Assembly: GCA_964247055.1 (NCBI GenBank)
Contig: OZ176056.1
Coordinates: 2,790,001-2,854,000 of the forward strand
Direction: 5' to 3'
From: Paragordius varius
Taxonomy: Eukaryota > Animalia > Nematomorpha
Length of the DNA: 64,000 nucleotides
Below, piece after piece: positions 1 through 61,038 of this stretch (the stretch's first letter is position 1; every line of letters starts with the position of its first letter). A program made the position numbers and the translations under genes. Below the pieces are notes generated by a model that saw only the letters and a list, made by a program, of their open reading frames with translations, made no database searches and was not told where the DNA came from.

Positions 1-81
1 ATATAAGAATTTAAAGCAAAACAGTTATCAGAAAATTTGTTTAATTATGTTTATATATATATTATATATATATATATATAG

Positions 82-126
82 ATCTAGTACCTTCTAGCGG
101 TGATGTTTCTTCCAGATCAATCGACG
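82..126 (+). CDS. Micro-exon (D)LVPSSGDVSSRSID
   Basis: (TA)nG acceptor, GTATTA donor, 45 nt, open in phase 1-1; identical copy at 51332-51376. Confidence 0.6.
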
Positions 127-3100
127 GTATTATAAATTAAATTAACATATAAACTGAAAATATCTCTTCTTAATCTTTTAATTGGTTTTCAATGCCAGAC
201 CAATTTTTTTTATTTAATAACCGGTGGTATTGTATTAAAATTAAAACACGTGTATTTCAATTTTTTGAAGAAAAATGATTATATATGAAAATAATTATTT
301 TACACATATAGAACATGTTTGATTTTACTTGAAAATTTATAGGAATTAAGATAACTTATTTGTAAAATATAAAAATACATCAATTATATTTTTCCTTATC
401 AGAAAATAAATTGTGAAAAATTTTTAAACTGCAATTATCGCCTTTTAAAATTTTATCCGCATATTTTTCAAAATGACTAATATTTAATTCTAACTATAAT
501 TTATGATTAAAAAAATTTGATCCCTTAAATCAAATTAAAATAAGCACTCAGTTTCAGAAGCATAAATTAATACAATTCAATTCTAAACCTAAATATTAGG
601 TTTTATCAAACAATTAAAGAATGAATATTTTATCATTTTAAAACATTATGTTTATATATCTCCATCTCTACTACAAACAGAGGTTTATTAATGTTAAATT
701 ATTTTTCATATTACCTATACACCCGTATCAGGTCCTGAACTAAAACGTTTCCCATTAAGATGTAATATAAAATAAAAATAACCACATTTTTCCCTAATAG
801 CATAATTGAATTCCGCGTATAAACCGTAAATCTATTTTTACAATTGCATCATGTTATAATAAAAAGACATTAGGTTTAATGCATATTTTTTTAATATACT
901 AACAAAAATTTTATATTTTTAATTAAACAGGAATTTGAGTTACTAAAACATATTTTGCTAAAATTGACGTGTTTTATATCAACTACATTCATTCAATCTG
1001 TATTTGTGTAATGAGTACTAAACGTGAAATTATCAAATAAATGGGCGGTTTCTTACCAACTTGTATTGTGAGGATTCGACACTATAAAAATTAATTTCTT
1101 ATATCGAATTGGCCGTGGGAAAATATTTTCTAATAAATAAGGAATGCTGAATTTATATGCATATATGTTTTTGAAACTATTTATCCAATTTACCAAAAGA
1201 TTGAATTATGTTTTCAAGGTTATTGCAAAATTTTTTTTTAATATATCATGACATAATTATGGCAAAAATATAGGGTGTTACAGATCCCTCAGATAAGTAA
1301 AAATATTTAATATGGTTAGTTGTCGTTTTTTATCAATCACTATCTAACCAATTTTGATAGCTATGATAGTTATATATGTAATATTTAAGATGCTCCATGA
1401 TATACCTTTGCAAATCTGTTAAAATGTATATTAACTTAGTTCCAAATATCTTTCTTTAAAGAAACAATAATTTTTTAATGCGAATTAAAAATGACCTCTT
1501 TTGTCAAATTATAGATAATATCTTTGAAGAAAAGTCAAAAAATCAGATATTAAATATTGGGGAATATTTAAGTATATGGGTCAAGCTAGTGGAAAACTTT
1601 TCTAATGATAATAAATGTCAATGGATATTGAATGGTAAAGAAATCACGACAGTTTATAGACAAAAATCAAAAACTTATTCTTACACAAAAGACATGATCA
1701 ACTTAACAGATGGTGGAAATTATACCTTTAGCTGTGGTTCAAAATCAATAAATATCTCAGTGAGAATCATTGGTAAATATGTTAATATATATTAAGTTGT
1801 AGTTTTTAATATATAAATATAAATATTTCAAAACAAGATACATTTTATTTTATTTAGAACCAGTACCAATGACTTATAGCCATAATCAAGTTAATATTGA
1901 TTTTTCTCGAGTCATACAAAAAAATGAATTGTACAATGTTACTATATTGGAAGACTATCATATGCATGATGACAAAAAGAATTTCTCAGAACTAAGCCCA
2001 TACATACATCATTCACCTAAATTTGAAATTATATGCATTTCAAATTTGATAGAAGAATACTGTTCTCCTCTAATTCCAAGTTATTTTATGATAATTTTAA
2101 TTTAATAATATATATACAGCGTCCTAAAAATTTATTGATGAAAAATTTATAATCTGATTTGAAAAATTCAGAATCGTGTGGTATTTTTGATTTTGGTTCT
2201 AAAGAGTGATATAAGGAAGTTTTCACATTGTGGTAACTAATCAATATCAGAAAATATAAATTAAGGCACTTTTTTATAAATGAAATTTTTTGGTCAATGC
2301 TAAATGCCTTATGCCAAAAAATACTAAAATATGTCAAAAACAGATGAAAGCAAAACAATATTTTTAAAATAAATTATTTGTTGGCTCCACCAAATTTTTT
2401 CGCTATTCTAAAATGGGTTACTATTAAAATAAATACAAAAATGCCGAGATTGCGCGATAAAAATTTTGATAATATGCTAAAAATTTAAAAAAAAAATTAA
2501 AAATTATTTTTCAAAGAAATTAGATAGAAAAAGTAACATTTTGCTAGAAATTGAATTGTTAACCAGCGGGACTTATAATAAAATTTTAAATTATCAAAAA
2601 AAAATTTAATACACTATGACAAAACATATTATTTGGAACAATTTACAATAAGGGGTATTTTATGTAGAAATTTACCGGGTCTATAATTTGCAATATGAAT
2701 ATCTGCCTAATTTGGATATAAAGTTGTGTTGGTCATCAACTTACAGCCCAAAAGTTAAAATATATGAAGGATACAATTGTGAGAATTTTATAAACGAAAC
2801 AACCGAGCACGCTTACATTCTAAAATACACAACTATTATCAAGAAAAATCAAACTTATTGCTTACAAACTGTGAATCAAAGCGCAAATTTGTTTGAAAGG
2901 ATAGCCGTAACAATACCAACAAGTATTATTTAGTTATAATTGTGAGACAATTAAAACATGTAAAAAGATGATATAAAACTTGTTTTGTAAACTTCGGTCA
3001 AATTAGGATTAAAAATTCAAAGTTTTTCTTATAAAATCATGTTTTTGTTTCTTTTAAACATATTCTGCGGCTGGGGCCGGCACGGTCCAATGTAAGCCCT

Positions 3101-6100
3101 TACGCGGACAATAATCTATAAAAATTAAAAATAAAGTTTAGAGCCTTCATATGCTATTATTAATTTTCTATAGTCATACTAACATGTAGAAATAAAACAG
3201 TTGTTAAAACATAAGTCATCGTTGTACTTTCAATTTATATAAGAATTTAAAGAAAAACAGTTATCAAAAAATTTGTTTAATTATGTTTATTTAAACGTCA
3301 TGTTCCCAAAATTACCTAGCTTAAAAAAAGTATATACATTATATATAATATATCGTATTTAATTGCAAATTTCTACAATAGATATATTTTTACAAACATC
3401 CAAAAAAATTGTTAAGAATGTTGGGCAAGATTTTGAACTTTTTGTCAGACTACCAATCAAAATTCGAAATTTCACAGGAATCTGGCAAATAAATGGTACC
3501 GAAATTAAAGATGGTTTTAAGAAAAAATCCTGGGATACTTACACACATGTAAGAGCGAATGTTAGCAAAAATGATACTGGAACATACACATTTGTGGTTG
3601 GACCCAAATCAATAAGCATTAATGTGAAAGTCATAGGTAAATCTATTTTTTAATAATCTATTTATTTTTTTATAATTTTAATATACTATAATATTTCCAA
3701 TATCATTTACATTTCAAATTCACCCTTGAACAATTCGAATTTAGTTTTTCAAGAAAATATTAACTATATTTTATATTTCATATAATTAAATATTTTTTAT
3801 AATTGAAATATGAAAATAAAACCTAAGTTATAAAAATATATTTCCAAATGAATAATATTAGCCTGAAAACACATGTTTTTTTAGGGTGAATATGATTTGT
3901 AAATGGTATATATTCTAATAAAAAATCTATCTGGATACTATAATGGCTGTGGTATATAATCTTAGGAGTTATTTAATAAAATAACTTTCGTAAGTAAATA
4001 TATTCGGAAAGGGAAATGCCTGAAAATTATCATGATTGCCAAAAATGATGTTTACAATTATGCTTCATAATCAAATATATCACTAAAATATATTTATTAC
4101 ATATATAAAAATAATACTTTAAATATTTTTAAAAGTTTTTATTTTTTCGCTAAATAGTGTAGTTCTCTTAACACTTGGATACAACACATTCATTTTGGTC
4201 CTTCGATTCAAATTGGGGTAGTTGAACCATGCCTGTTAAAAATTAAATTATTTAACACTTTGATTCAAATTGGGGTATCTAAATACCCCAGACTAAATTT
4301 AAATTAAGATTTTTAAAAAACAACTGAATGAAACGGTCCCATTTAAATTTATGCTTCTATCCTTATAAAAATTACATAAATATGCCATAATATGTAAATA
4401 AAATTTTGTTTTGAAAAAAAAGTTCCATCTCAAACTACTTCGACGCCATTTTTATTTTAAATTTTTTTTTGCAAAATATCGTCTTCATTTAACATTTCGA
4501 TTCAAATTGGGGTATCTAAATACCCCAGGCTAAATTTAAATTAATATTTTAACAAACTATTAAAGGAAACGGTCCCAATTTAAATTTATGCTTCTATCAT
4601 AATAAAAATATAAATATGCCAAAATATCTTGATAAATTGTTTTGAAAAAAAAGTTCCATGTCAAACTACTTCGACGCCATTTTTATTTTGCAAAATTTTT
4701 GCAATATATCGTCTTATAATAATTTTAAGGGTAAAATTAAAGGTTATTTTTTTTTTGATTTACATCTAACATTGATTAAAAAAGAAAATGCGGTTTATTT
4801 TGTATTATTTTTTAATTTTACCATTTCACACATGTCACGTTGACTAAATTTTAACCTTTCGGTTTTGGCTTAAAATAAGTAATATCAAGTATTTTTGAAT
4901 AAATTTTTTTAAATATTTGGTTTTATTAATGTTATATAAGTGCAAAATTTTGCAATGGTTTTGATTCCTTCCATATTTTTTAAATAATTTAATTTTAAAC
5001 AGGTCTGGGGTATTTAACCACCCCAATTTGAATCGAAGGACTAAAATGAATGTGTTGTATCCAAGTGTTAAGAATTATGGAAGGAATATAAACCATAACA
5101 AAATTTTGCACTTATATAACATTAATAAACCGGAGTATATAAAAAAAAATTTCAAAAATACTTGATATTACTTATTTTAAGGTAAAACCTAAAGGTAAAA
5201 ATTTAGTCAACGTGGCATATCATTGATTAAATTAAAGAATAATACAAAAAAACCACTTTTTTTATTAATATCAATTTATATGATTTAAATAAAAAATTAG
5301 TTTTACTATACCTTGAAAATAAATGAACACGATATTTTGAAAAAAATTTGCAAAATAAAATTGCATCCAAGTAGTTGGACATGAAAATTTTTTTTAAATT
5401 AAATTTTATTTAGATATTTTAGATTATTTATATAATTTTTATTGGTATAGAAGCATAAATTTTAATTAGGACTGTTTCCTTCAGTAGTTTTTTTTAAATT
5501 TAATTAGGTCTGGGGTGTTTAGATATCCAATTTGAATCAAAGTGTTTAAATGACACAAAGATGCTGAGCGCGCTGAAAAATTTAATTTTATCCTAAATTA
5601 TAACTTAAAATATTATTTAAAACTGCAGTTTTAAATTTTTAAAAATTAACTATTATATTATGTTAATATTCTGTCCCATATATATACTATTTTTTGGTAT
5701 GATAACGGGATAAAAACACTTAGAATATATATTGAAAAATATTGTTAATATAATAATGATAAACATTTTTAATATCTCAAACTTTAAATATTCGTTAATT
5801 TATGATTTATCTTAAATATTTTTTTACAAAATTACATCTAAATTTTAAGCAAAGGCTTTTAATTGAAATTTTGCGTAAGTATGTTCAGCATCATCAAATT
5901 ATATAGAATTAAAGTAAAGTGTTTTTATGCGGTTTCTATTATAAAATTGTACGAAATACGTTCCAACAATGTTAAAAATAAATTTTTTAAAAAAAAGGAT
6001 GCATTTTTTAAATAATTTTAGTTAATAAAATTTAGCTTAATTTATCATATTTATTGCGCCTCGGCATTTTTGCCTTTATTGTAAGAGAACAGCCCATTAT

Positions 6101-8125
6101 AAAAGAACCAAACAGTTTGGGACTTTTGGAGCCCTAATCCTATAACTAATTCTTTTAAAATAATTGTTTGGCTTTTTATTAATAGTTTATTATATATTAT
6201 ATATTTAAAATGAAGCTTATAGCTTTCAAAAAAAATTATCTGAAAAAATGTGTGCAGATTTTGTCAATTCTATATTAGTATAATAAAAAAGTGTTCTATA
6301 TTGCTCGTAAGTAAAAGGAAATGCACTAAGATATTCCCAATATAAATCCTTATCGAAATATTATTATATCAGGGTATCTTTTTGTTACCCCCCATAGGAA
6401 GCAGTGTGATACTGAGCATCTTTATTTTAGGCTAAATGCTTTATTTCAAAAATATTGTAGTATTACATACTATAATTTAAAGCAGAACAATATCTTAATA
6501 TTTTAATTTAAAAAACGTGGTCCAAGTCTCAAAATATTTAAACCGTTAAATGGTCTAGTTATCTTAAAAAACGCAATGCGGATGAGATAACAACATTTTT
6601 AATATATAATTGTTTCGCAATATGTTGAACATATTTTTAGATGCAATGTAAAAAACACTTTAAGGAATTCGAAAATATTTGAATGCCAAATGTTAGAATA
6701 GGGTTCGAGGTTTAATTAAGTTCAACATCAACGATATATATATAGAAAAGGGGTATATATACAAAGGTTTGTTTTACCGTTTCACCTTACTCCAAAACAT
6801 CTTAAAATACGCATCAAAATTTTATAAAATTATAACTTTTAACCAAACTAGGCTTTTAATATAATTTTATTTGATGTTATATCCCATATATGCAAATTCT
6901 TATCGCAAAATTTAGTTTATTTTAGAAGGCGTCAAATATATATGACGTTCGAGACTCACATCTTATAATTAGAATTAATGAAGCTTTCTTTCTTTTAATA
7001 CTCCTGACATTTTGGGGTAATATACCCTATCCTTTTACCTTTTATAGACGCTTGCAAAAAAAATTTATTTAAAATTCCTTATTTAATACTTTTTACACGC
7101 CATTTTTTCAATTATTTAAATCGCTAGTACAACATGCAATAAATAAATATGTTGGTTGAACAACGTAAGCAATTAACTTTCGAAGGCTCTAATTACGACC
7201 AAATTTTCGTAATTGATTTCGATATCAGTTGTGCTTTTGAATCGTGTTCTGGAGCTATCTATATTTAGGGCTCTGGAAAAAATTAAAATTTTAAGTTGTT
7301 TACACCCTGTGTCCTGCGTAAAAATTTTTTTCTTAGATAGCCCAGCGAATTCATTTGGCGAAAAAAATTAATTTATAGATGACCTGGTTGACATAAGAGA
7401 AAATTTAAATTTAGCATCAAAACTTTATCATTTAATTTAACACAATAAAATACATATAAGATTAATAAATTATTTTTTTGAGTAATACTGTTTTATTTTG
7501 GAATCCTACCTGAGCGGGAAGTGGAATTCAACAATCTGCATACAGGTTTACATATAATATTTTTACTGAGATTTACGGATATTGGTGGAAATTACATTTA
7601 AATCCTATTTTGCATTAATTTATATAGATTATGATTCCTGCTCATATAAATTCCAAAATAAAACAGTTATTTTATTAGACACTCGCTCATAGTGGCAATA
7701 AATGAAAATTAAAACAATATTTTATTAATTTTATTTAATATATGCGTTTTTAGTATAAATTATAAAAGTTAAAAAATTTTTAAGTTCATAACATTTTAAT
7801 TGTGTAAGAAATATGTTAAAGGTTTAAACAGGATTTTTGATCTGAGTTTTAATAAAACCATTATATGATTTTAAGCTATTAAATATGTAAATATCTGATA
7901 TCTATAAATAATTAAATATCTCAAGTTTAGATTATTTTTTCCTTGAATAGATTTAATTTCCCGATTTTTGCCCAACTTTGATTTTTCAAATTTAATAAAA
8001 AACAAATTACAATTTTTGTGGCATCGCTGGTTATAGGCTATCATATAATAATCGACTCTTTTTGCTTGCAAACAGGGTGCAACATAAGATGCGATAATTT
8101 AGTATACAATCTTAAAATGAAGATT

Positions 8126-8164
<39 letters not shown>

Positions 8165-11100
8165 CATTACTTATACAAAAATTGCTTATGATTATTATTA
8201 ATAATACGTGAAATAGATCAATTCAATGACAACGTTTTTTTAGTTGTTACTTATTAAGCAGAATTTTCTTAATATATGAAAGCGACTGTTATAGTTATTA
8301 CGACCATTTATACTAATAATTTGTTTTATTTATAAAGATCCTTTAGTATCCAAACTCTATCCCGATCAGGTTACAACTGATTTTTCACCAGTTGTGGAAC
8401 AAAATCAAACTTATTATGTTAGTATTTATGAAAATGAATTTGAAGTTAACGAAGAATATATAAGGAATAATACCCAACTAACACCCTACACATATGAAAT
8501 ACCTCCAAATTTTGAGGGATCATATACTTTTTGTATCACCGCTTCTTTCGAGGAATATTGTGCGGAGGAGATTGATATTCCAGGTTAATATTTTTAGTAT
8601 AATCTTATAAGTTTATGCGGATCATTATGCAATTTTTAAATTTTATCTAAAACCTCATCGTGTTAAGTGAAAACGAGTTTAGGTGGTTTCAAAGCCACGC
8701 GAGACAAAAATATGGAATTCAAAATTTTATATTTTTAAAACTCTATAAAGATCATAATTTGGCTGGTTTAATTTATTTTTTTCCATGAACATTTATGAAG
8801 TGGATATTGAGCCATGTTTTTCCCGAGAGTTATGACGGAAGAGGCCACTAAGCATATATGATCATAATTCATAATTTTACGTTTAAAATTAATTGTTAAA
8901 TCCCTCATATAATTGTAAAATTGTCAAACCTGTATTCTCGCTAATATTTATTCCGGATGACTATATTTTAAATTCTGAAATGTTAATATATATAAGATAA
9001 ATGATAAAAGGTTTATTAACTTTTATATATTATTACAAAAGGAATTATGCTAGATAAATTTATTAAATGACTAGGGAAGCCATGGTCAAAACCACTGGCA
9101 ACAAAACGGGGTTTAATAATTGATGCTATGAAAAATATATCGCCAATACCTAAAAGTTTTAAGATACGTATAAATTGACTGAGAATACGGTTAAGCTAGA
9201 AAAAGTTTTTGGTAATTTATAATTGACTAAAGTAAATCGCATCTCATCCTACACCAGGGCAAAAAAATAAAAAACAAGGTACCATCAGCAAAAATTTATT
9301 CGTTAATATGATGTGGAAACATAAATTTAAAAGCTAAATGTTATTCAATCTGTCGTATTTCAGCAGGGTCTTGGGGGCCTAAATATTAGCTTAAACATTA
9401 CGATTTGCTTCAAATATGAATAAAATTTATGTGCGGATAAAATTCTATTTATTTTACCATACACTTACTAGATATTAAGAACGTACCCAATATATAACTC
9501 AAAAATAGCAGCAAGATAATAAATATTAACAGTCCTCGAATATTTTCATATTATAAATATTTTTGATGTGATAAAATAATTTTGGCACCATTTTCGCTTT
9601 GGGTTTTATGTATAACAATCCATGTATAAAAATAAAGTCAATTCTTTTTCTACATAAGATTTTACAGAATAAATATAAATATTGGAAATTAATTATACTC
9701 AATTTCCAATGCATATTATCTAAATCTATATAATGTATATCATATATATCATATATAAAGGTGTAGTCATAAGTTTTTATTGTTTTTTGGTTAAACAAAT
9801 AGATAAATTAGAGAATCATTTATTGTTTAATATGTACACGGCTTCACATTTCGCCCTTGAAGGTTTTGTTGAATCATTTATCAATGTTCTCCAAATTAAT
9901 GAAGTAGTGCTTTATTAGGTTGAGCTTCATTGATGTAAAGATGTAGTAATCAGATAGAGTCAGTTGAGCAGGGCGGATGCAAAATTTTTTTTTCATCATA
10001 CAGATTTTAAGGCGTGAATCAGCTGTGTGAGACGAAAAATTGTTACGTAGCGAATCACTTTGTCATTTCTGGCTGGGAGGTTTTTCGAGTAATGCATCGT
10101 TTAAATTAATCGAGTTGCTTATTAATGGTCTCCATAGCTTTAAACATAATAAAAATACCAGTAACACATGTTATTTCTAAAGCGATTCAGGTATTTGTGT
10201 TAATGGACCCTTGGCAAAGTAAAGACGATTATTTTCGTTTTGCATTTATAATGAAGCTTTTTTCATCATCAGTCACATTTAGTGCAAAAACACCTCATGA
10301 CGCTTAAGCAGGTTTCGGAAGTCACTTAATAATTTTCATGTTTATTTAAATTGTGTAGGCCTTTTTTTTACCAAGTTTGGCCAATCCCATTGCTAGACGC
10401 CTGCTGAATATCCAAACATGGAATGCTATTGCCAACTGTTGATTTCGAATTGGGTCCTATATCCAATAACTATTGTACCTGATCGTCTATGTGGTCAACC
10501 AGAAAGACCACGGTTCTTGAACACAATTTTTGAAACCATTTAACGTGATTTAATTGGGATAGCATGTGTTAAAATGACGTTTTTTTAAACCTTTTTTGAT
10601 GAAACAAAACATTCTTAGCGTTCCGAAAATGTTCTTCGAAGTCAGAAAATTTGATATAATTACCGAGTGATAAAATAAAACGCTACCTTTTTGCGAAATC
10701 GAAATGCTTATATAGTTTAATATCAAATGAAAAGTTCTATATAAAATCGATCGTTTGCCCACTTTTTGCTCATGTCTTCTCTTAGTTAGGTAATTACATA
10801 AATTTATATCACAATGTGAGTTTGTGGGAAGGTGTTTTCAATAAGCAATTTTAACTTACTTCCATTTAAAAATCAGAAGATTGCAAGGTAATTAGCATCA
10901 GTTATTATTAAAATATTGATTATATAGTTTATTATAGGGAAGTTTACTTTCACTATGGTTGCCCTAATTTTTTACCGCATTGTTCTCTTTAAAATCCAAA
11001 ATTATAAAATATAACATTAGAAAATATGATAAAGGAGCCTAAATTAAGTATTTTAATTTTATACCTGTTTTAATATTAAAACAGTATAAAATTTGTACTA

Positions 11101-14100
11101 AATAATCTCAAATTAAATATAACAAATCTAAAAATCATGATTTTAACTTAGACTCACTTAAAATTAATTCATTTTCCCTTTATGCAAAGATTAAATTAAA
11201 AAATTGTAATATTTTCAAATTATTATCATTAACATTAGTATCTTTTTCATGTTAGTTATTCAGTATAAAAGGAAGGTGAATATATTTAACTAAAATAAAT
11301 GTATATCTATTTACTTTTTTTTCCTTTAGCCATGCCGAGTGTCAATATACATTTTACGACGCAAAAAAATGGTGTAAACCTATCTTGGACAGAATATAAC
11401 GGGGTATCGTATTCACTAACCGCTAATGGAAAAATGTTTAAGAATAATATTAAACCAAAATATTTCATTACATATGAGCTGCTTCAATCAAATAAATTAA
11501 TTTTTACTGCATACAACAAGAGAGGAGAAACCAATTTTACTATACCTGAAAGTAAATTTTAAATGAAAATAACATTAAATATGCATCGTTATTTATTTAT
11601 TATTAATTGTAATTATAATTAAATTCTATCAATTATATTAAAATTTAAAAATGATTCGGATGGATAGTCCCAGATTTTTCTCTTAAAAAATATTAATGGT
11701 TTTTGTTTGTAATGGGTCGCGTTCATACTAATACAATTATTATTGAGTAAAAATTAATTTTAATTTCTTATGGCACTGCTATACATAATATACCTATATT
11801 TTTATAACATAGCACCTATAATAACCGAAATAATACCGCTAAGAAAACTACATGACATTGAAGCTACGGATAAGGATCAAAAAATAATTTTTATACGCTC
11901 CAATGCCAAATATTTTAATATTTCTAAAGACGAAAACTGCGAAACTTGGTTTAAATCCGAACCTTTAATGTCTTTAAATGCGTCGACCACGAAAATATGT
12001 ATTAGGGCTTACAATGGAGACTTCTTTGGCCCAATTGAAACTCATGTCCTTGAACGAACAGGTATGTGCAATATATGTATTAACATGTTTTATATCACAT
12101 GTTAGTATATTATTTACAGTTCAAATTCACCCTTGAATTCAACCTCTTCAATTCACCCTAAACTGAATTATGTGCTTTTTAAGATTAAAACTTACCTTAT
12201 TTTTTAATATTTTTAAAATATGAAACTTTGTTTAAAATTAATATAATGCTGAAAAAATAATAAACTATATCGTAAAAATATATCCCATATTACTGATAAG
12301 TTATGTTAGAACTAGGGTTGTGCTGACCAAGTTATGACCCGGTCAATTGACCGAGTCATGACCAGGTCAGTGAATATTTATTTTTTAACCATGGTCATTT
12401 AAAAAAAACAACTGTTTTTGAAAAATTGAATTTTTTTTGGAAGAAAGCTATAAAGATTGTATTGTTTTTTAATATATTTTCTAAAAAATATATTTTAAAT
12501 ATGCATGTTTAACAATATGATATTGTTAAACATGCATTTTTATAACATTAGGATTTAATATCCAGTTATTTCGAAAAACAAAACAATCAAGAGCTTTTCA
12601 AAATATGGAATTATTCCATATCTGTGAACCAATAAAATGAATAACATTATATAATTGGATATTTTAATGATGAAAGAAATCAAACAAACTAGGTAAAATT
12701 TAATTTGAAATATCCAGTATAAGCTATGTATTAGAAGCTTCAGAAGGCCACAAACATGTGGCAAAATTCAATTTTATACAAATTTCTTGATTAAATTTGG
12801 TTAATATTTGTAAATAAATATTAAAAAAATGTATACTACAATCTTTAAAAAAATATGATATTATTAGTGAAACGCAAGTGTAATTCGAACTTTATTTTGA
12901 CAATCCAAAATCGCATGATACTTAATTAATTAAAAAGTAATCATGACCCTGACTGGGTGTGACCGGACTTTTTTGAAAAAGCAGTCAAATGCACAACCCT
13001 AATTAGAACACATAATATATTTGTAGGGTAGATTCGAATTGTTGAAGAGCGAATTTGAATTGTTCGTTAGTGAATTTGAATTGTTTAAGGGTGAATTAAT
13101 TGTATATGGTATATAATAAAAAAAATATGCCATTTTTTCATTTTGACTAATTATAAAATATGCAGTAAATTTTTGAATTCTTCATATAACCTCTCTTAAA
13201 AACAACCGCAAAATCTTATAAATTATTAATATATGATTATGAAATTTCAATAAATTTGGTAAAAAAAAAGTTTAAAGTTATATTGCCTAACACTTCATGT
13301 TTCAATTTTTTCCCGAGTGACATATTGGGATAGTTGTATATCTAAGAGATCCATTATAAGTTAAACTACTGTTTTGAAAGTTATTTTAGTTAAAAATTAT
13401 CAAACATTGTTCTCAGGTAAGATAAAAAAGCATATATTTTTTTACAGATTTGTGACTACTAGAGTCCAAAAAAAATAGGAACAGCTCTATCGCGATTTAA
13501 ACGAACAGCTCATATAAAAAATATATATCATGTTTTCGCTGATGTTTGCAAAGCTAATTATTTACCTTTTTTAATCATAAAATACACTTTATTAGCCTTG
13601 TTGCATTGGCGATTTAATAAAAATTATAGAAAAAATGGCGGTGAAAAGTTAGAGATGAAAATTGTTTTAAAAAAAATTTGTATAATGCGCCAAAGCACTA
13701 AAGAATATACCTTAAATCAGGGGTATCTAACACAAATGGCTTAAAGAGCTACATTTAAATTAATATATTTCAAGACAAAAGTATCAAATAAATATATTCC
13801 TCAAACTTTTATGTGTTAAAAACACTTTTTCGCTTAACAAATTCTTAGCTGCTAACCAGCTTTTCTCATGTTTCTCAGTCCAATACCATCTCGTATTTTT
13901 ACTAGTTAATTCATGTAAGGGACCGACTATCATTTGTAATTTTGGTATAAAGCGTTCATGAAATGTCAAAAAACCTAAAAAGCTACGTAACGACTTTTTA
14001 TCTACCGGCCTTTTTAGTTCCTTGATTGCTTTAATTTTGCTTTCACAGGGACTTATACCCTTTTTCGATATTTCAAACCCTAAATAGTTTACTGATTCTG

Positions 14101-17100
14101 CCCCTATCACTATTTTATCTTGTCTTAATTTAAATCCGGCCTTATCGAGACGACTTAATACGTTATTTAAATTGTTAATGTGCTCATTTTCCGTCCTACC
14201 AGTCACTAGGACGTCATCTAAATATACGCAAGTTCCCGGACTTTCGGCCAGCACTTGTTCCATCACTCTTTGGAAGATGATAGGTGCCGTGGCCAGTCCA
14301 AACGGCATGCGTTTGTATCTAAAAAAACCCTTATGTGTTGAGATCGTTAACAATTCTTGACACTCCTCTGCCACTGGCATCTGGAGGTAAGCATCTTTTA
14401 AATCAATTTTCGTGAATGTGATACCTTCACCTATTTTCGACACCAACTCATCAAACGTGGGAATTATGTGGGAGTCTTCTTGCAACCACTTATTAATCGT
14501 TACCCGAAAATCACTACATATTCTTAATTCGCCATTCGGTTTAAGTACATTGACCGTAGGCGTGGCCCATGTCACAGGTGTGGTGTTAGGATCAACCGGT
14601 TCTAAAATGCCTAACTTTTCTAGCCTCGTCAGCTCTTTCTCCACCTTTTCTCTTGATGGAAAAGGCACCCTGCGACATGGCCATACTTTCGGGATCGCAT
14701 TCGCTGCAATGCGAATTTTTACAGGGTCCTTATAACACCCTAACTTATTTTCGAATAAATTTTTAAAATTTTCACAAATCTCATTCAATTTAAGATAATT
14801 AACTTTAACCTGTGGCATCTCAATCTGGAATTTCGACATCCAGTCCAGTCCACAGATTAGCGGGGCCATTCCCATCGTTTTGCATAGGACACATATGTCC
14901 CCGACCATTTGTTTACCATTTAATTGGACTTTGACACTTGCCGTCCCCATCATTGGCACTGTGGTATTGTTGTACGATTTTACTGGGGGTGTCGGATGCA
15001 GCCTGGGTTTACCGATTTGCTCCCATGTGGCAAAGTTTATTACGCTGATGTCCGAACCGGTATCATATATAAAATCTTTTTTTACCCCGTTTATTACTAA
15101 TGTTATCAGTAAGGGGCTTAGCGCCTTATGACCCACGTTAACTTCCTTCGACAATTGCCTATTGAAGTGCGGTCTTTGTTTTTTGGCTACACACATTCTC
15201 GCAAAATGGTTTAGCTTTCCGCATTTGTTGCAGGATCGTCTCCAGGCAGGACACTTGTTGGGTGGGTGTGTGGTGCCGCAATATTTACATGTGGTAGAAG
15301 GTTTTATTATTGTTTGTCGATTGGATTTATTGTGTTGTAACCGATTGATATTATTATTGCTACTATATCGATTGCTATTGTTATTACTATTATTGTTATT
15401 CTGTAATCCAGCCTTAGCAGACTCATGTGCTAGTGCGAGATCTACGATTGTTTCTAGTGGAACAGGAATACCGTTTATCAAAGCATCTGGATACCTGGAA
15501 TGGATATCCATCTCTAGTTGAGGCTGTCGCAGTCCTATTACGAATGCATAACGAATACGTTGTTCTATCGCTTCAGTAAATTGAGCTTCTTCAGCTCCTA
15601 TCTTGACACGCTCAAGGAATTGGGTAAAACTTTCACCCTCGTTGCGTACCAGCCTATAAAATTCAAAACGACTTTGGAATTTTGATTTTGTCGGATTGAA
15701 TATTTTTTTGCCTGTTTCCGTGATCTCCGCCCATGTGGCGTCTTTTATTTTCTTGGGATAAAGGTGTTGGTTAATCTTTCTTACTATCATAAATCCGCCA
15801 TATGCCAATATCGTTGATTTAAGCGTTCTTTCGGTTACTGGAATATCCTTTGCCTCGAGTACGTTGCTAATGTACTCGAGGTACTCTTCAAATTTATTAT
15901 TATCGTTATATACCTTAAATCAGGGGTATCTAACACAAATGGCTTAAAGAGCTACATTTAAATTAATATATTTCAAGACAAAAGTATCAAATAAATATAT
16001 TCCTCAAACTTTATAGATGTGTTAATTTTTATATTAAATTAAAAAAAACAACCATAGAGTGAGACGCGTATCGTCCTTGTTAAGGACTTATTCATAATGA
16101 ACACAAGCGTACTCTGTCAGTATTTTAAGATTTTAAGACGAGTGATAACGAAAGAGAAAACAGAGAACTTAAGGCCTGGAGAGGGCAACCAATTGTAGTT
16201 TGATCAAGCTAATTAGCATAACTCCTTCTTATCCATCAGCCAGGATAGGGAATTTATAATTAAAATTCACAAATTTTTTGGTGGCCATTTTTATATTTAA
16301 GGGTAGGCTAATATTTACGATCTCCATATTATGTTGTTATTAAATATAAAAATGGCTTTTTCCGCCAAGATTTTTGTGAATTTTAACTAATAAATATATA
16401 AAATTTTGCTGTTAAATTGTACTTGAATGGAAAATTAAACTTTAATTTTTATAAAGATCTGCTAATGAAAGCACAATTATATAATATAGCATGATGTATA
16501 TTTTTCACAAGGACAATAAACCACCTTACTTAATCCTGCTGTACTATGTTTAGCATGCAATATTTATATATATAAGATATTAGAAAAAAATGTATGGACT
16601 ACCGAATCTTTTATAATTGTATTAAAATAAATCCGACATTCTAATATAGATCAATATTAACAATGAGCTGCTTGTTTCACCGATTTGAACATATTCTTTA
16701 CAATGACCCATGTAATGAAATGTAGTTATTTTTATATAATAATCTGCTTTATAGCACAATTCAAAAATATGGCTTTCACTACATAAATAAAAAACATTTA
16801 CCAATTCTAAATATTTTCCAATACATAATTTATAATTCCAATAATATGGGTAGTTGTAAAAGGTAACAAAGGTATGAAACCTAAAACTGAAAAGATATAT
16901 ATTCGGTTTTTTGTGTTTATATATACTATAGTGAACATAATTTGCATGATAACAATAAAATTTTCGAGTAACAAAGGATATGATATTTACATAGTACAAA
17001 AAAATATAAAAATAAGACATTGCAAATCTCACTAAAGATTATAGTATATAAACAAAACATATATTCATATGTTAAGTATTGCATTTTAAAAATGGGACTG

Positions 17101-18313
17101 GGGTTTTGAATATGGCTTTTTTACAAAATAATTAACAAAAAGTTTAGCAGTGGAAGTTTCTAAAGATTCTCAGATTGTAAAGGAAATAAATGATTCAATG
17201 AATGTGATGAAAAATAATAAAAAATATTATGAAAATTTTTGTGTAAATCAATAAAAAATTTTCAATTCCTTTTCAACACCCCTTCTTGAATGCTCGTTTT
17301 TGAGTTTTTATTTCAAATCGCTCAGAGATATACAACTCCCCCAAAATGTCATAGACTATATAAATACCACCTTTATATTATAGTTTTTTCGACAAATATA
17401 TGAATATATAAATCCTAATTCTCTATCAAAAATTAATGCGTTTACATAATTGCATCTAAAGCAATTTAACCATTCAATTTAGCTAAGGCTTGACTAAAAA
17501 CTAGGAAAAAATTTAATAACTATGAAATTATGTGAATCATTGTAGATCCAAAATTTTTGTTTAATATTAGTAATATTTATTTATATACAATTAGTTTATT
17601 CTGGCTCTGGTACAAAGGACCCTGGTTTCCAATCAAGTTATAAAAGAAAAGGTATTTGCATTTAAATGAAACAAAAGTTGCGTTTGGATTGCGTTTTTGG
17701 TTAAAAAAAGTTTTATTAAAAAAATAGTGCGGTATATGCCTATTATTATTTTGCTTTCCTCTATAACTTAGGTCAAGATGATGGGTCTGGATTACGGCGT
17801 TCTGGTTATAAGGGAAAAGGTATGTTTTTTATATAATTATGTTTTCTAAAACTAGAATATGATTTGACTGGCATACACAAAAGTTAGCATTCAAAGTTCC
17901 TTTAAAATCCTTCATAATACTCTAATGATTTAAGTCCTTATCAATAGTTTGCAGATTTTTGCTGGAAATCTTTTAGTTTATTGTTTTTAAAATGTGTAAG
18001 ACATGATATTTCCTCGTCACATATTATCTTTTAATAAAAAAATAAGATTGTAATTTCACGTGAAAGAATTTAAAAAGTTGTATGATGGCCGTTTTAAAAA
18101 ATAATTTTAATTTTAAAAACTGGGTCTTGACCTTAAATGAACAGAATAAGTGAGGGCATATTTATGATATTATAATAACATCTACGAAATGTATCATAAT
18201 GTGATTCATTAATATTAATTATTTTAACGTTTATTGATTTAAGTAGAGTTTTTTTTATATTAAAATTTTTTAACTATTTAGGTTTGTTAGATGACGAAGA
18301 TACATGGAAATGA
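82..18313 (+). CDS. Multi-exon Ig/FN3-like extracellular glycoprotein gene, copy 1 (signal-peptide exon lies upstream of the window)
   Basis: Exons 82-126, 1515-1772, 1858-2079, 2668-2922, 3382-3636, 8338-8583, 11330-11551 and 11813-12061 all have AG/GT boundaries, phase 1-1 and lengths divisible by 3, and join in frame. Tail exons 17595-17651, 17772-17819 and 18282-18313 are less certainly linked. Confidence 0.8.
1515..1772 (+). CDS. Exon: Ig-like domain 1
   Basis: ATTATAG acceptor, GTAAAT donor; W-x-LNG (CQWILNGKEI) and D-x-G-x-Y-x-F (TDGGNYTFSC) Ig motifs. Confidence 0.85.
1858..2079 (+). CDS. Exon: divergent FN3-like domain A1
   Basis: TATTTAG acceptor, GTTATT donor; clearly paralogous to exon 8338-8583 (QVNIDFS/QVTTDFS, CISNLIEEYC/CITASFEEYC). 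The FN3 fold is an inference. Confidence 0.75.
2668..2922 (+). CDS. Exon: divergent FN3-like domain B1
   Basis: TATGTAG acceptor, GTATTA donor; I-x-L-x-W (IKLCWSS) and TYCLQTVN resemble FN3 strands B and F. Confidence 0.7.
3382..3636 (+). CDS. Exon: Ig-like domain 2
   Basis: CAATAG acceptor, GTAAAT donor; WQINGTEI and NDTGTYTFVV motifs; paralogous to Ig domain 1 (KSINISVRII vs KSISINVKVI). Confidence 0.85.
3710..3899. mobile_element. Short Tc1/mariner-type MITE (same family as 12117-13102)
   Basis: TA-CATTTCAAATTCACCCTT at left, AGGGTGAATATGATTTG-TA at right. Confidence 0.5.
4172..5544. mobile_element. piggyBac-like TTAA MITE complex with internal tandem duplication and inverted partial copy (foldback)
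   Basis: TTAA-CACTTGGATACAACACATTCATTTTGGTCCTTCGATTCAAATTGGGG at 4172 is inverted at about 5020-5067, followed by TTAA. A second terminus (CACTTTGATTCAAATTGG, 4256) is inverted at about 5525-5544. About 4260-4490 repeats at about 4500-4720. Family fragments also occur near 33320 and 47380-47430. Confidence 0.75.
8129..8162. repeat. (AT)17 microsatellite
   Basis: Direct reading; (AT)34 at the duplicated site 59386-59453. Confidence 0.95.
8338..8583 (+). CDS. Exon: divergent FN3-like domain A2
   Basis: TATAAAG acceptor, GTTAAT donor; DPLVSKLYPDQVTTDFSPVVEQNQTYYVSIYEN; paralog of exon 1858-2079. Confidence 0.8.
9758..10780 (-). mobile_element. Degenerate mariner transposon remnant
   Basis: TIR-like GGTGTAGTCATAAGT at about 9760. 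The minus strand carries ATTAATTTAAACGATGCATTA...CAAAGTGATT, shared with the 21.2 kb mariner, and a decayed HPPYSPDLAPSDY motif. Confidence 0.7.
11330..11551 (+). CDS. Exon: FN3 domain
   Basis: Polypyrimidine CCTTTAG acceptor, GTAAAT donor; VNLSW...YSL...FTAYNKRG is a canonical FN3 pattern. Confidence 0.85.
11813..12061 (+). CDS. Exon: FN3-like domain
   Basis: AACATAG acceptor, GTATGT donor; ICIRAYNGDFFGP FN3 C-terminal motif. Confidence 0.8.
12117..13102. mobile_element. Tc1/mariner-type MITE (TA TSD) hosting a nested hAT MITE
   Basis: TA-CAGTTCAAATTCACCCTT at left and AAGGGTGAATTAATTG-TA at right; repeated AATTCACCC subterminal motifs. Confidence 0.65.
12313..13001. mobile_element. hAT MITE
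   Basis: TIR TAGGGTTGTGC / GCACAACCCTA; 8-bp TSD GTTAGAAC / ATTAGAAC; subterminal TGACC repeats. Confidence 0.85.
13705..13809 (+). repeat. 105-bp direct repeat, left copy (5' end of a Buster-type hAT MITE)
   Basis: Identical by eye to 15908-16012; contains the hAT-like terminus CAGGGGTATCTAACAC. Confidence 0.9.
13784..15919 (-). mobile_element. Ty3/gypsy gag-protease-RT fragment, uninterrupted ORF, truncated at both ends, no LTRs
   Basis: The frame is open from 15919 to the stop at 13784. It has zinc knuckles CKYCGTTHPPNKC and CNKCGKLNHFARMC, protease YDTGSD and RT YLDD, and stops at the RT/RNase H boundary (LSEKVFLTH); there is no RNase H or integrase. Confidence 0.95.
15908..16012 (+). 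repeat. 105-bp direct repeat, right copy
   Basis: Identical by eye to 13705-13809. Confidence 0.9.
17595..17651 (+). CDS. Micro-exon YSGSGTKDPGFQSSYKRK
   Basis: CAATTAG acceptor, AAAAG/GTATTT donor, 57 nt phase 1-1, GC-richer than its flanks. Confidence 0.65.
17772..17819 (+). CDS. Micro-exon GQDDGSGLRRSGYKGK
   Basis: AACTTAG acceptor, AAAAG/GTATGT donor, 48 nt phase 1-1. Confidence 0.7.
18282..18313 (+). CDS. Putative terminal exon GLLDDEDTWK-stop
   Basis: Long T-rich tract then TATTTAG acceptor, phase 1, TGA at 18311-18313; AATAAA at 18394 (weak evidence in AT-rich DNA). Confidence 0.55.
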
Positions 18314-47905: not shown

Positions 47906-47975
47906 ATGACCAGCATTATGAAATATATTTGGATATTATTATGCTTTACATTGCTATATGGTCAATCAGTTACAG
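47906..47975 (+). CDS. First coding exon: signal peptide MTSIMKYIWILLCFTLLYGQSVT
   Basis: ATG, basic residue, hydrophobic core, small-residue cleavage region, then ACAG/GTAATT phase-1 donor matching the phase of the downstream exons. Confidence 0.7.
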
Positions 47976-50900: not shown

Positions 50901-51291
50901 TTATATATAGAATTTTTTCAACTATAAAAGCGGCATCACTTATAATAAAATTTTAAATTATCAAATTTTTTTAAACCTACGCTATGACGAAAGGTTAAAT
51001 TAGGATTAAAAATTGAAAGTTTTTCTTATAAAATCATGTTTTTAGTTTCCTTTAAACATACTCTGTGGCTGGGGTCGGCACGGTCCAATGTAAGCCCTTG
51101 CGCGGACAAATAATCTATAAAATTATAAAATAAAAATTTAGAGCCTTCATTTGCTATTATTTATTTTCTATCGTCTTACTAACTTGTAAAAATAAAACAG
51201 TTTTTAAAAAATAAGTCATCATCGGACTTTCACTTAATATAAGAATTTAAAGCAAAACAGTTATCAGAAAATTTGTTTAATTATGTTTAAA

Positions 51292-51332
<41 letters not shown>

Positions 51333-57300: not shown

Positions 57301-59382
57301 CGCCTCGGCATTTTTGCCTTTATTGTAAGAGAACAGCCCATTATAAAAGAACCAAACAGTTTGGGACTTTTGGAGCCCCAATCCTATAACTAATTCTTTT
57401 AAAATAATTGTTTGGCTTTTTATTAATAGTTTATTATATATTATATATTTAAAATGAAGCTTATAGCTTTCAAAAAAAATTATCTGAAAAAATGTGTGCA
57501 GATTTTGTCAATTCTATATTAAGTATAATAAAAAAGTGTTCTATATTGCTCGTAAGTAAAAGGAAATGTACTAAGATATTCCCAATATAAATCCTTATCG
57601 AAATATTATTATATCAGGGTATCTTTTTGTTACCCCCCATAGGAAGCAGTGTGATACTGAGCATCTTTATTTTAGGCTAAATGCTTTATTTCAAAAATAT
57701 TGTAGTATTACATACTATAATTTAAAGCAGAACAATATCTTAATATTTTAATTTAAAAAACGTGGTCCAAGTCTCAAAATATTTAAACCGTTAAATGGTC
57801 TAGTTATCTTAAAAAACGCAATGCGGATGAGATAACAACATTTTTAATATATAATTGTTTCGCAATATGTTGAACATATTTTTAGATGCAATGTAAAAAA
57901 CACTTTAAGGAATTCGAAAATATTTGAATGCCAAATGTTAGAATAGGGTTCGAGGTTTAATTAAGTTCAACATCAACGATATATATATAGAAAAGGGGTA
58001 TATATAGAAAGGTTTGTTTTACCGTTTCACCTTACTCCAAAACATCTTAAAATACGCATCAAAATTTTATAAAATTATAACTTTTAACCAAACTAGGCTT
58101 TTAATATAATTTTATTTGATGTTATATCCCATATATGCAAATTCTTATCGCAAAATTTAGTTTATTTTAGAAGGCGTCAAATATATATGACGTTCGAGAC
58201 TCACATCTTATAATTAGAATTAATGAAGCTTTCTTTCTTTTAATACTCCTGACATTTTGGGGTAATATACCCTATCCTTTTACCTTTTATAGACGCTTGC
58301 AAAAAAAATTTATTTAAAATTCCTTATTTAATACTTTTTACACGCCATTTTTTCAATTATTTAAATCGCTAGTACAACATGCAATAAATAAATATGTTGG
58401 TTGAACAACGTAAGCAATTAACTTTCGAAGGCTCTAATTACGATTTAACACCAAATTTTCGTAATTGATTTCGATATCAGTTGTGCTTTTGAATCGTGTT
58501 CTGGAGCTATCTATATTTAGGGCTCTGGAAAAAATTAAAATTTTAAATTGTTTACACCCTGTGTCCTGCGTAAAAATTTTTTTCTTAGATAGCCCAGCGA
58601 ATTCATTTGGCGAAAAAAATTAATTTATAGATGACCTGGTTGACATAAGAGAAAATTTAAATTTAGCATCAAAATTTTATCATTTAATTTAACACAATAA
58701 AATACATATAAGATTAATAAATTATTTTTTTGAGTAATACTGTCTGAGCGGGAAGTGGAATTCAACAATCTGCATACAGGTTTACATATAATATTTTTAC
58801 TGAGATTTACGGATATTGGTGGAAATTACATTAATTGTAAATCCTATTTTGCATTAATTTATATAGATTATGATTCCTGCTCATATAAATTCCAAAATAA
58901 AACAGTTATTTTATTATACACTCGCTCATAGTGGCAATAAATGAAAATTAAAACAATATTTTATTAATTTTATTTAATATATGCGTTTTTAGTATAAATT
59001 ATAAATGTTAATAAATTTAAAGTTAAAAAATTTTTAAGTTCATAACATTTTAATTGTGTAAGAAATATGTTAAAGGTTTAAACAGGATTTTTGATCTGAG
59101 TTTTAATAAAACCCTAATTATATGATTTTAAGCTATTAGATATGTAAATATCTGATATCTATAAATAATTAAATATCTCAAGTTTAGATTATTTTTTCCT
59201 TGAATAGATTTAATTTCCCGATTTTTGCCCAACTTTGATTTTTCAAATTTAATAAAAAACAAATTACAATTTTTGTGGCATCGCTGGTTATAGGCTATCA
59301 TATAATAATCGACTCTTTTTGCTTGCAAACAGGGTGCAACATAAGATGCGATAATTTAGTATACAATCTTAAAATGAAGATT

Positions 59383-59455
<73 letters not shown>

Positions 59456-61007: not shown

Positions 61008-61038
<31 letters not shown>

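What the first reader, a model, noticed from the sequence alone, without database searches (positions are those of the whole stretch)
82..18313. Unrecognised modular secreted Ig/FN3 glycoprotein with an (Ig-FN-FN) super-repeat, made only of phase 1-1 exons
Seen: exons from both copies splice into one frame of about 652 aa (signal peptide, S/G linker, Ig, A, B, Ig, A, FN3, FN3, S/G/K tail), with one domain per symmetric exon and no transmembrane exon found. Established: most Ig-superfamily adhesion molecules place Ig domains before FN3 domains, whereas Ig-FN-FN repeats typify intracellular twitchin/projectin/titin. Inference: this is a very divergent, lineage-specific secreted or surface protein. 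Symmetric exons allow any domain to be skipped in frame, and the neighbouring serpins suggest a host-interaction or immune locus. I cannot match it to a named gene.
Basis: partly seen in the sequence, partly recalled or inferred. Interest (0 to 1): 0.75.

Follow-up and report, generated by a model that had tools for sequence, protein, structure and literature searches.

The report
Fast-diversifying secreted Ig/FN3 gene, four tandem copies
This very AT-rich animal genome carries four tandem copies of an apparently lineage-restricted gene for a probably secreted seven-domain binding protein, and its coding pieces have diverged faster than the surrounding non-coding DNA, as seen in genes caught in host-parasite, immune or mating arms races.

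Summary
Twelve exons with canonical AG/GT sites splice into one 1959-nt frame of 652 aa, and every internal exon is phase 1-1. The order is signal peptide, short linker, Ig, A, B, Ig, A, F1, B-type, then a G/S/Y/K tail on three micro-exons, stop at 18311-18313. No transmembrane segment was found.

- **Domains:** The Ig exons match titin and FGFR Ig domains by sequence profile. A and B match nothing by sequence but model confidently as seven-strand FN3-type sandwiches.
- **Copies:** The gene sits in a ~50-kb unit with two serpins, repeated four times, and all four copies are intact. Two more paralogs and related A-F1-B modules lie on the same chromosome.
- **Homologs:** An A-domain profile found no eukaryotic homolog among 1.84 billion representative proteins.
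- **Divergence:** Between recent copies the exons differ more than their introns (8.4% vs 4.5%; last domain 24% vs 3%). Stops and frameshifts are absent. Against an older paralog, only the exons still align.

Best reading: a real, fast-diversifying secreted binding protein. Expression and function are untested. Other first readers of this scan flagged two paralogous loci (s1-267165, s1-248866).

The parts
47906..47975 (+). Signal-peptide exon of copy 2 (ATG, 23 codons plus 1 nt, donor G|gtaatt, phase 1). The identical exon of copy 1 lies 3267 nt upstream of the window start.
   Evidence: The 70 nt are 100% identical at six places in the array, because the exon is duplicated locally in copies 3 and 4. 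It holds the top hydrophobic window of the model.
82..126 (+). Linker micro-exon, 45 nt, phase 1-1 (..LVPSSGDVSSRSID..).
   Evidence: It is 100% identical in all four copies, with an AG acceptor and a GT donor.
1515..1772 (+). Ig1 exon (I-set-like Ig, 86 codons, canonical Cys pair absent).
   Evidence: Splice sites. Ig profile against PDB: titin E=3e-9, FGFR 3e-3. Copy 1 vs copy 3: 13 nonsynonymous against 1 synonymous change.
1858..2079 (+). A1 exon: FN3-type sandwich with a C-x8-C pair near its C-terminus.
   Evidence: AF2 pLDDT 86.6 with seven strands. VIA Z 7.1-6.0, 65-72 of 73 residues aligned, nearly all rows FN3. No PDB or Pfam sequence hit. Copy 1 vs copy 3: 27 nonsynonymous, 2 synonymous.
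2668..2922 (+). B1 exon: FN3 fold with two invariant Cys.
   Evidence: AF2 pLDDT 89.1. VIA Z 9.7-7.8, most rows 76-82 of 84 residues aligned, top 50 almost all FN3 domains including cytokine-receptor ones. Alignment A6.
3382..3636 (+). Ig2 exon, 35% identical to Ig1.
8338..8583 (+). A2 exon, 38% identical to A1.
   Evidence: Identical in all four tandem copies. Only 78% identical to paralog P6, although the flanking introns are 94-96% identical.
11330..11551 (+). F1 exon: FN3-like by sequence pattern. Its fold was not predicted.
   Evidence: Language-model neighbours include fn3 and Ig_J clusters at 0.88-0.90. No Pfam or PDB sequence hit.
11813..12061 (+).
   Evidence: Alignment A6 with invariant C37/C64. 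23.7% substitutions against 3.1% in the flanks between copies 1 and 3. Nucleotide alignment.
17595..17651 (+). Tail micro-exon 1 (57 nt, phase 1-1, ..YSGSGTKDPGFQSSYKRK..).
   Evidence: Present in all four copies and in P6.
17772..17819 (+). Tail micro-exon 2 (48 nt, phase 1-1, ..QDDGSGLRRSGYKGK..).
18282..18313 (+). Last exon (..LLDDEDTWK, stop TGA at 18311-18313).
51237..64000 (+). Copy 2 of the gene from just upstream of the linker exon through B2, running off the window. Linker 51332-51376, Ig1 52760-53017, A1 53103-53324, B1 53912-54166, Ig2 54626-54880, A2 59629-59874, F1 62614-62835, B2 63096-63344.
   Evidence: 98.5-98.8% identity; exon coordinates. Intact 652-aa ORF once the tail beyond the window is added.

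Best explanation
This is a real protein-coding gene for a soluble, secreted, N-glycosylated seven-domain protein. No relative was found outside this genome. The order is signal peptide, linker, Ig, FN3-type A, FN3-type B, Ig, FN3-type A, F1, FN3-type B, then a short G/S/Y/K-rich tail.

Shown:
- The exon structure.
- Intact reading frames in four tandem copies.
- The Ig identity of two exons.
- The FN3-type predicted folds of A and B.
- Family members elsewhere on the chromosome.
- Exon-focused divergence.

Inferred:
- The protein leaves the cell and works as an extracellular binding module.
- Its binding surfaces are under diversifying selection, while unequal crossing-over and gene conversion amplify the ~50-kb unit and keep the introns alike.
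- The most likely arena is an antagonistic interface. Otherwise it means the animal's own innate recognition.
For: **Gene model.** Twelve exons, all AG/GT, with internal exons phase 1-1, give 652 aa. The same model is intact in all four copies: 652, 652, 646 and 646 aa.

**Selection against breakage.** With 136 exon substitutions between copies 1 and 3, 0 of 2000 neutral simulations using the intron mutation spectrum stayed free of stops. All 6 exon indels are multiples of 3, against 16 of 46 in introns.

**Long-term constraint.** Against the older paralog at C7:3.11 Mb, four of the five domain exons compared (A1, B1, A2, part of B2) still align at 75-79% nucleotide identity. F1 aligns only at the protein level, at 51%. 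The introns do not align. pN/pS there is 0.41-0.73.

**Domains.** Ig profile to titin Ig, E=3e-9. A model pLDDT 86.6 with FN3 hits at Z about 7. B model pLDDT 89.1 with FN3 hits up to Z 9.7.

**Extracellular signs.** An N-terminal hydrophobic signal, no other hydrophobic segment, sequons 19 against 8.3 +/- 2.5 in shuffles, and invariant Cys pairs in the B domains.

**Diversification.** Exon against intron substitutions are 8.4% and 4.5% (p=5e-5), and 23.7% and 3.1% for B2 (p=8e-18). Ig1 plus A1 have 40 nonsynonymous against 3 synonymous changes (binomial p=0.023). A1 nonsynonymous rate against intron rate gives p=8e-11.

**Contrast within the unit.** The serpin last exons, which carry the reactive loop, are 91-100% identical in the intact copies across units.
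Against: - There is no transcript evidence of any kind.
- Overall dN/dS between copies is 1.36, not significantly above 1 (p about 0.09).
- For A2 and B2, synonymous sites are also elevated over introns. Part of the pattern may therefore come from intron homogenisation or exon-sized gene conversion rather than point-mutation selection.
- One paralog (C7:4.79 Mb) has in-frame TGA stops.
- The signal peptide was judged by eye and a hydropathy scan, not by a dedicated predictor.
- F1 was not folded.
- The parasite setting rests on an earlier unchecked note.
Confidence: 0.6

Rival explanations
1. It is a reproductive or extracellular-matrix/adhesive protein, for example in gamete recognition, egg-string or cuticle adhesion. 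Fast evolution would then come from sexual selection rather than host or pathogen conflict.
For: Rapid, exon-focused divergence in a secreted multi-domain protein is equally typical of reproductive proteins. The Tyr/Gly/Lys-rich tail (..SGYKGKG..) recalls adhesive or cross-linkable sequences; that comparison is from my own knowledge and is not tested.
Against: Nothing here separates this from the host or immune reading. Co-amplification with two Arg-P1-like serpins fits an anti-protease or immune setting slightly better.
Confidence: 0.2
2. The copies are decaying duplicates under relaxed constraint, and the apparent excess of amino-acid change is simply neutrality.
For: Overall dN/dS of about 1.3-1.4 is not significantly different from 1. 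The expected neutral amino-acid change (about 100 for 136 substitutions) is close to what is seen. Paralog P6 carries TGA stops.
Against: - 0 of 2000 neutral simulations avoid a stop, yet all four copies are open.
- 6 of 6 exon indels are in frame.
- All 44 splice sites are retained.
- Exons diverge faster than introns, which neutrality cannot produce.
- Most exons are conserved and introns are not against the older paralog.
Confidence: 0.08
3. It is a membrane-anchored cell-adhesion or receptor molecule whose transmembrane or GPI-signal exon was missed, or is used in an alternative 3' end.
For: 5.5 kb of intron lies between B2 and the tail exons. I only screened phase-1 open segments there.
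Against: The only hydrophobic candidate (13554-13679) lies in a dispersed repeat. The tail exons travel with the gene in five of five recent copies, and the tail ends in a charged, non-hydrophobic sequence.
Confidence: 0.08
4. It is an intracellular titin/twitchin-like muscle protein fragment. The Ig-Fn-Fn-Ig-Fn-Fn-Fn order equals the titin D-zone super-repeat as I recall it, and that recollection was not tested.
For: The Ig profile's best solved relative is titin. The Ig domains lack the canonical disulfide Cys. The seven-domain order matches.
Against: - A signal-peptide-like first exon is conserved 100% in every copy.
- Sequons are enriched.
- Conserved Cys pairs occur in the A domains (lost in one paralog, L035) and are invariant in the B domains.
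- The best structural matches of A and B are extracellular FN3 domains, with no titin or twitchin among the top 50.
- The protein is small, at 652 aa.
Confidence: 0.04

Closest known systems
Extracellular IgSF/FN3 modular proteins (NCAM, L1, contactin, Dscam, DCC, LAR-type phosphatases)
   Same: They also have a signal peptide, I-set-like Ig plus FN3 modules, one domain per phase 1-1 exon, and N-glycosylation sequons.
   Different: Those proteins put an Ig block before an FN3 block and are membrane-anchored. Here Ig and FN3-type domains alternate (Ig-A-B-Ig-A-F1-B), no anchor was found, the Ig domains lack the canonical Cys pair, and no sequence-level orthology was detected.
Titin / twitchin / projectin Ig-FN3 super-repeats
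   Same: The Ig and FN3 domains are interleaved in the same order. The Ig profile's best solved match is titin. The Ig domains are disulfide-free.
   Different: Those are giant intracellular proteins without signal peptides. Here there is a signal peptide, sequon enrichment, Cys pairs in the FN3-type domains and only 652 aa. A and B have no special structural affinity to titin FN3.
Soluble Ig + two-FN3 cytokine-receptor-like proteins (IL-12 p40, IL-6R-alpha-type ectodomains, poxvirus IFN-gamma-binding protein)
   Same: The unit is Ig followed by two FN3 domains, soluble. Many of the best fold matches of B are cytokine-receptor FN3 domains such as IFNAR1, IL-13R-alpha and TSLPR at Z 9.1-9.5. 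A also matches a poxvirus IFN-gamma-binding protein at Z 6.5.
   Different: There is no sequence similarity and I saw no WSXWS-type motif. The fold hits are generic FN3. The inter-domain geometry was not modelled because the joined protein was not folded.
Gene families with exons evolving faster than introns (snake venom genes, PMC6062510; schistosome host-interface genes with symmetric micro-exons, PMC4350168; MHC peptide-binding exons, from my own knowledge)
   Same: They are tandem multigene families of secreted proteins in which exon divergence exceeds intron divergence. Symmetric exons would permit in-frame skipping.
   Different: The protein folds and lineage are different. Here the variable units are whole Ig/FN3 domain exons, and alternative splicing is not shown.

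Membership tests
Immunoglobulin superfamily, I-set-like domain | Significant sequence-profile match to Ig domains | tested here: met
   A profile of the four Ig exons hits titin Ig at E=3e-9 and FGFR Ig at 3e-3 to 1e-2. Single-sequence Pfam hits are below threshold (Ig_3 and I-set, E about 0.1-0.2).
Immunoglobulin superfamily, I-set-like domain | Canonical B-F strand Cys pair | tested here: not met
   Alignment A3 shows Val or Phe at the expected Cys positions. This is also common in muscle-type I-set domains, so it does not exclude the fold.
Fibronectin type III fold (domains A and B) | Seven-strand beta-sandwich with FN3 topology, matching solved FN3 domains over the whole domain | tested here: met
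   B: pLDDT 89.1; Z 9.7-7.8, most rows 76-82 of 84 residues aligned, rmsd 1.9-3.3, top 50 almost all FN3. A: pLDDT 86.6; Z 7.1-5.9, 65-72 of 73 residues aligned, nearly all FN3. Z below 8 for A is only moderate support.
Fibronectin type III family (Pfam PF00041) by sequence | Match to the fn3 profile at or near the gathering score | tested here: not met
   No fn3 hit at E up to 10 for the A, B, F1 or B2 exons. No PDB sequence hit for the A, B or F1 profiles.
Fibronectin type III fold (domain F1) | Predicted FN3 fold | not tested
Secreted protein | N-terminal signal peptide and no membrane anchor | tested here: inconclusive
   The hydropathy scan finds a single N-terminal hydrophobic segment, and the C-terminus is charged. 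No dedicated signal-peptide or TM predictor was available, and there is no cDNA to rule out other 3' exons.
Class I/II cytokine-receptor homology module | Paired FN3 domains with the conserved Cys pattern and a WSXWS-like motif, forming a ligand-binding elbow | tested here: inconclusive
   Only generic FN3 fold matches to receptor domains. I saw no WSXWS in the exon translations. The elbow could not be modelled because the joined protein was not folded.
Titin-type muscle super-repeat protein | Intracellular giant protein lacking a signal peptide | tested here: not met
   The first exon is signal-peptide-like and conserved in all copies. The protein is 652 aa with enriched sequons.

The most novel reading that the evidence does not exclude
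The locus is a diversity-generating recognition system. A tandem array of secreted Ig/FN3 genes would keep domain-sized, symmetric exons as islands of hypervariability. Introns would be homogenised, and exons exchanged between paralogs by exon-scale gene conversion and possibly mixed by in-frame exon skipping. The product would be a repertoire of binders, for example decoy receptors of the soluble Ig+FN3+FN3 cytokine-receptor type aimed at host immune factors, co-amplified with protease-inhibiting serpins as a parasite 'immune-evasion cassette'.
Probability: 0.15. Interest if true: 0.8.

Novelty: new variant of a known kind. Interest (0 to 1): 0.5.

Why it matters
If expressed, this would be a previously undescribed family of secreted Ig/FN3 proteins in a poorly studied, extremely AT-rich animal.

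Three features stand out:
- The architecture alternates Ig and FN3-type domains, which is normally seen in intracellular muscle proteins.
- Two of the three FN3-type domain classes are invisible to sequence-family searches and are recognised only by predicted fold. The third, F1, was not folded.
- The divergence pattern, with exons faster than introns and no nonsense or frameshift changes, marks molecular arms races.

That makes the gene a concrete candidate for host-parasite or self/non-self recognition work. It is also a clean natural case for separating diversifying selection from intron homogenisation in a young tandem array. The domain types and the general phenomenon are both known, so this is not a new principle.

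Tried and rejected
1. Pfam on single exons gave only sub-threshold Ig hits and nothing for A, B, F1 or B2.

2. PDB sequence profiles for A, B and F1 found nothing significant.

3. An HMM of the A domain against 1.84e9 representative proteins gave four weak hits. Two are bacterial Big_5 or cadherin-like repeat proteins and two are translated tandem repeats. I judged these to be generic beta-sandwich or compositional matches, not homologs.

4. The B-type profile in the word-indexed protein database gave no hit. That search only sees proteins of about 46-147 aa, so it says little.

5. Profile-profile comparisons A vs B, A vs F1 and F1 vs B were not significant. Only B1~B2, A1~A2 and Ig1~Ig2 are demonstrably related.

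6. A screen for a transmembrane exon between B2 and the tail found only 13554-13679, which lies in a dispersed repeat. I rejected it.

The paralogs are known only from ~3.2-kb pieces.

8. The tail micro-exons were not found in the ~1 kb available downstream of paralog P5.

9. Two literature searches found no description of such a family in hairworms.

10. It was used only inside scripts, for length, stops, hydropathy and sequon counts.
Full report
**Setting.** The window is G000:C7:2790001-2854000 of a 110.5-Mb, 44-contig animal genome. GC is 22-40% in 2-kb windows and about 24% over the gene. I did not test that, so every statement about a parasitic lifestyle is conditional on it.

**The observation.**
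- Stop-free segments on the + strand and splice-site inspection give seven domain-sized exons: 1515-1772, 1858-2079, 2668-2922, 3382-3636, 8338-8583, 11330-11551 and 11813-12061.
- Each is a multiple of 3, with an AG acceptor, a GT donor and phase 1 on both sides.
- A 45-nt phase 1-1 linker exon starts at 82.
- Three micro-exons (17595-17651, 17772-17819, 18282-18313) carry a G/S/Y/K-rich tail to a TGA at 18311-18313.
- The first coding exon (ATG, 23 codons plus 1 nt, donor G|gtaatt) is visible for copy 2 at 47906-47975. For copy 1 it lies 3267 nt upstream of the window.
- The only hydrophobic 19-residue window is at the N-terminus, and the C-terminus is charged.
- There are 19 N-X-S/T sequons, against 8.3 +/- 2.5 in composition-preserving shuffles.
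- All searches were exon by exon, by reference.

**Copies and relatives.**
- The second copy in the window (51237-64000) is 98.5-98.8% identical.
- I took 264 kb around the window. It shows a ~50-kb unit repeated four times, plus a partial upstream unit, between about C7:2.773 and 2.981 Mb.
- Each unit carries this gene. Units 1 and 2 also carry a convergent pair of serpin genes. In units 3 and 4 only one serpin last exon each was found, and unit 3's is broken by stops (Pfam Serpin on each exon piece).
- The units also carry transposon fragments (gypsy, hAT).
- All twelve exons are present in all four copies, with all 44 splice dinucleotides intact. The open frames are 652, 652, 646 and 646 aa.
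- Copies 3 and 4 have a full gypsy element in the B1/Ig2 intron, and copy 1 has a gypsy fragment at 13705-16012. The copies are therefore distinct loci, not an assembly duplication.
- Two further paralogs lie at C7:3.107-3.1205 Mb (P5, +) and C7:4.785-4.801 Mb (P6, -). P6 has in-frame TGA codons in two exons.
- Related A-F1-B exon triplets with short introns lie at C7:8.772-8.776 Mb, and an F1-like exon at 5.813 Mb.
- Every paralogous exon I could inspect keeps the phase 1-1 boundaries.
- Other first readers flagged copy 4 (s1-267165) and the P5 locus (s1-248866) independently.

**What the domains are.**
- Ig1 and Ig2 are 35% identical. Their profile hits titin Ig at E=3e-9 and FGFR Ig domains at 3e-3 to 1e-2. 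The canonical Cys pair is absent.
- A1 and A2 are 38% identical.
- A, B and F1 give no Pfam or PDB sequence match and are not significantly related to each other by hhalign.
- AlphaFold2 on eight-sequence paralog alignments gives confident seven-strand models: A pLDDT 86.6 and B pLDDT 89.1.
- Foldseek finds FN3 domains at TM 0.55-0.71 but E >= 4e-3.
- The exhaustive structural aligner gives, for B, Z 9.7-7.8 with most rows aligning 76-82 of 84 residues. The top 50 are almost all FN3 domains, many from cytokine receptors.
- For A it gives Z 7.1-5.9 over 65-72 of 73 residues, again almost all FN3. By the tool's own calibration this is moderate support.
- F1 was not folded. A language-model search puts it near fn3 and Ig_J clusters at 0.88-0.90, which is only a lead.
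- The architecture is therefore Ig-FN3(A)-FN3(B)-Ig-FN3(A)-F1-FN3(B).

**Is it outside this genome?** A profile of five A domains was scored against 1.84 billion representative proteins. It found 4 proteins at E <= 1e-3 and none at 1e-10. Two are bacterial Big_5 or cadherin-like repeat proteins and two are translated tandem repeats. The B profile found nothing in the word-indexed database within its length window. The genome's own prediction is evidently not in those libraries. No named orthologue emerged, but related animal genomes could not be searched directly.

**Is it a working gene?**
- Against the older paralog P5, A1, B1, A2 and part of B2 still align at 75-79% nucleotide identity, while the introns do not align at all. 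F1 aligns only at the protein level, at 51%. pN/pS there is 0.41-0.73. That is ordinary long-term coding constraint.
- Copies 1 and 3 differ by 136 exon substitutions. In 2000 simulations placing that number of changes with the intron mutation spectrum, none stayed free of stop codons, yet all four copies are open.
- All six exon indels are multiples of 3, against 16 of 46 in introns.

**The unexpected part.**
- Between recent copies the exons are more diverged than the introns around them. In 763-3700, exons differ at 8.4% and introns at 4.5% (Fisher p=5e-5). Around B2 the figures are 23.7% and 3.1% (p=8e-18).
- Nei-Gojobori counts give dN/dS of 3.2 for Ig1 (13 nonsynonymous, 1 synonymous), 3.6 for A1 (27, 2), 1.3 for Ig2, 1.7 for B2 and 0.35 for B1. 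A2 and F1 are identical.
- Ig1 plus A1 together depart from neutrality (binomial p=0.023). The nonsynonymous rate of A1 exceeds the neighbouring intron rate with p=8e-11.
- The same holds against P6: A2 is 78% identical with flanking introns at 94-96%, and B2 is 84% against 94-96%.
- There, synonymous sites are elevated too (pS 0.16-0.23). Part of the pattern must therefore reflect exons with a deeper history than their introns, from intron homogenisation or exon-scale exchange between paralogs, rather than point-mutation selection alone.
- Over the whole CDS, dN/dS is 1.36, not significantly above 1.
- In the same repeat units, the serpin last exons, which carry the reactive loop, are 91-100% identical in the intact copies. 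The divergence is therefore gene-specific.

**Interpretation.**
- The best-supported reading is a real, secreted, glycosylated modular binding protein of a family with no relative found outside this genome, amplified in tandem and diversifying in its domain exons.
- The mechanism (extracellular binding, with selection for variant surfaces) is inference.
- The arena (host-parasite, own immunity, reproduction or matrix) is not resolved.
- Resemblances to titin's Ig-Fn-Fn-Ig-Fn-Fn-Fn order and to soluble Ig+2xFN3 cytokine-receptor modules are recalled from knowledge and only weakly touched by the fold matches.
- Symmetric exons would allow in-frame skipping, but nothing here shows that it happens.

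**Novelty and verdict.** The domain types and the phenomenon of exons outrunning introns are known (for example PMC6062510 and PMC4350168, as listed). This is a new variant of a known kind: an interleaved extracellular Ig/FN3 architecture, FN3-type domains invisible to sequence searches, in a young four-copy array. Interest is moderate (0.5), pending any evidence of expression.

Noticed in passing
G000:C7:2773500-2981000 (window plus loci L009-L028): A ~50-kb unit is repeated four times in tandem, with a partial fifth upstream. Identity between units is mosaic, 90-99%, pointing to unequal crossing-over and gene conversion.
   Followed up: partly
window 29549-30945 (+) and 35738-37165 (-): Two convergent serpin genes, each with a GTEGAS hinge and an Arg near the predicted P1 (..MYR|S.. 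and ..GNR|F..). Their last exons are 91-100% identical between the intact copies, and a unit-3 copy (C7:2928144-2928452) has stop codons.
   Followed up: partly
window 13705-16012 (-): A gypsy gag-PR-RT fragment with an open frame of 711 codons, flanked by a ~105-bp direct repeat. It is present only in copy 1 and was already noted by another reader (s1-373838).
   Followed up: no
L015 about 3800-8350 (C7:2897800-2902350): A near full-length Ty3/gypsy element (gag, PR, RT, RNase H, integrase pieces with frame breaks) inserted in the B1/Ig2 intron of copies 3 and 4 only.
   Followed up: no
window 25891-27667 (+): A hAT-family transposase-like open frame (about 186 plus 442 codons) with a C-terminal hAT dimerisation domain. 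A related fragment lies on the minus strand at 48988-49418.
   Followed up: no
window 2136-2531: The A1/B1 intron holds a dispersed repeat with more than 30 copies at about 70% identity on many contigs.
   Followed up: no
C7:2888029-2888098 and 2890693-2890762; C7:2938235-2938304 and 2940895-2940964: The signal-peptide exon is duplicated by a local 2.67-kb duplication in copies 3 and 4, giving two identical candidate first exons per gene.
   Followed up: no
L048 1165-2045 and L047 1174-1719 (C7:8772363-8775805): There are related A-F1-B exon triplets with short introns (95-126 nt) and the same phase 1-1 boundaries. This may be a more compact member of the same family.
   Followed up: partly
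window 2080 and 8584: Two of the eleven donor sites of the gene are GTT (gttatt, gttaat).
   Followed up: no
window 45-81, 8130-8180, 51290-51330 and 59390-59440: (TA)n and (ATATAT)n microsatellites lie directly upstream of the linker exon and about 150 nt upstream of A2. Their lengths differ between copies 1 and 2.
   Followed up: no
window 43774-46444: Fragments of a non-LTR reverse transcriptase and a gag-like open frame lie between the serpins and the signal exon of copy 2.
   Followed up: no
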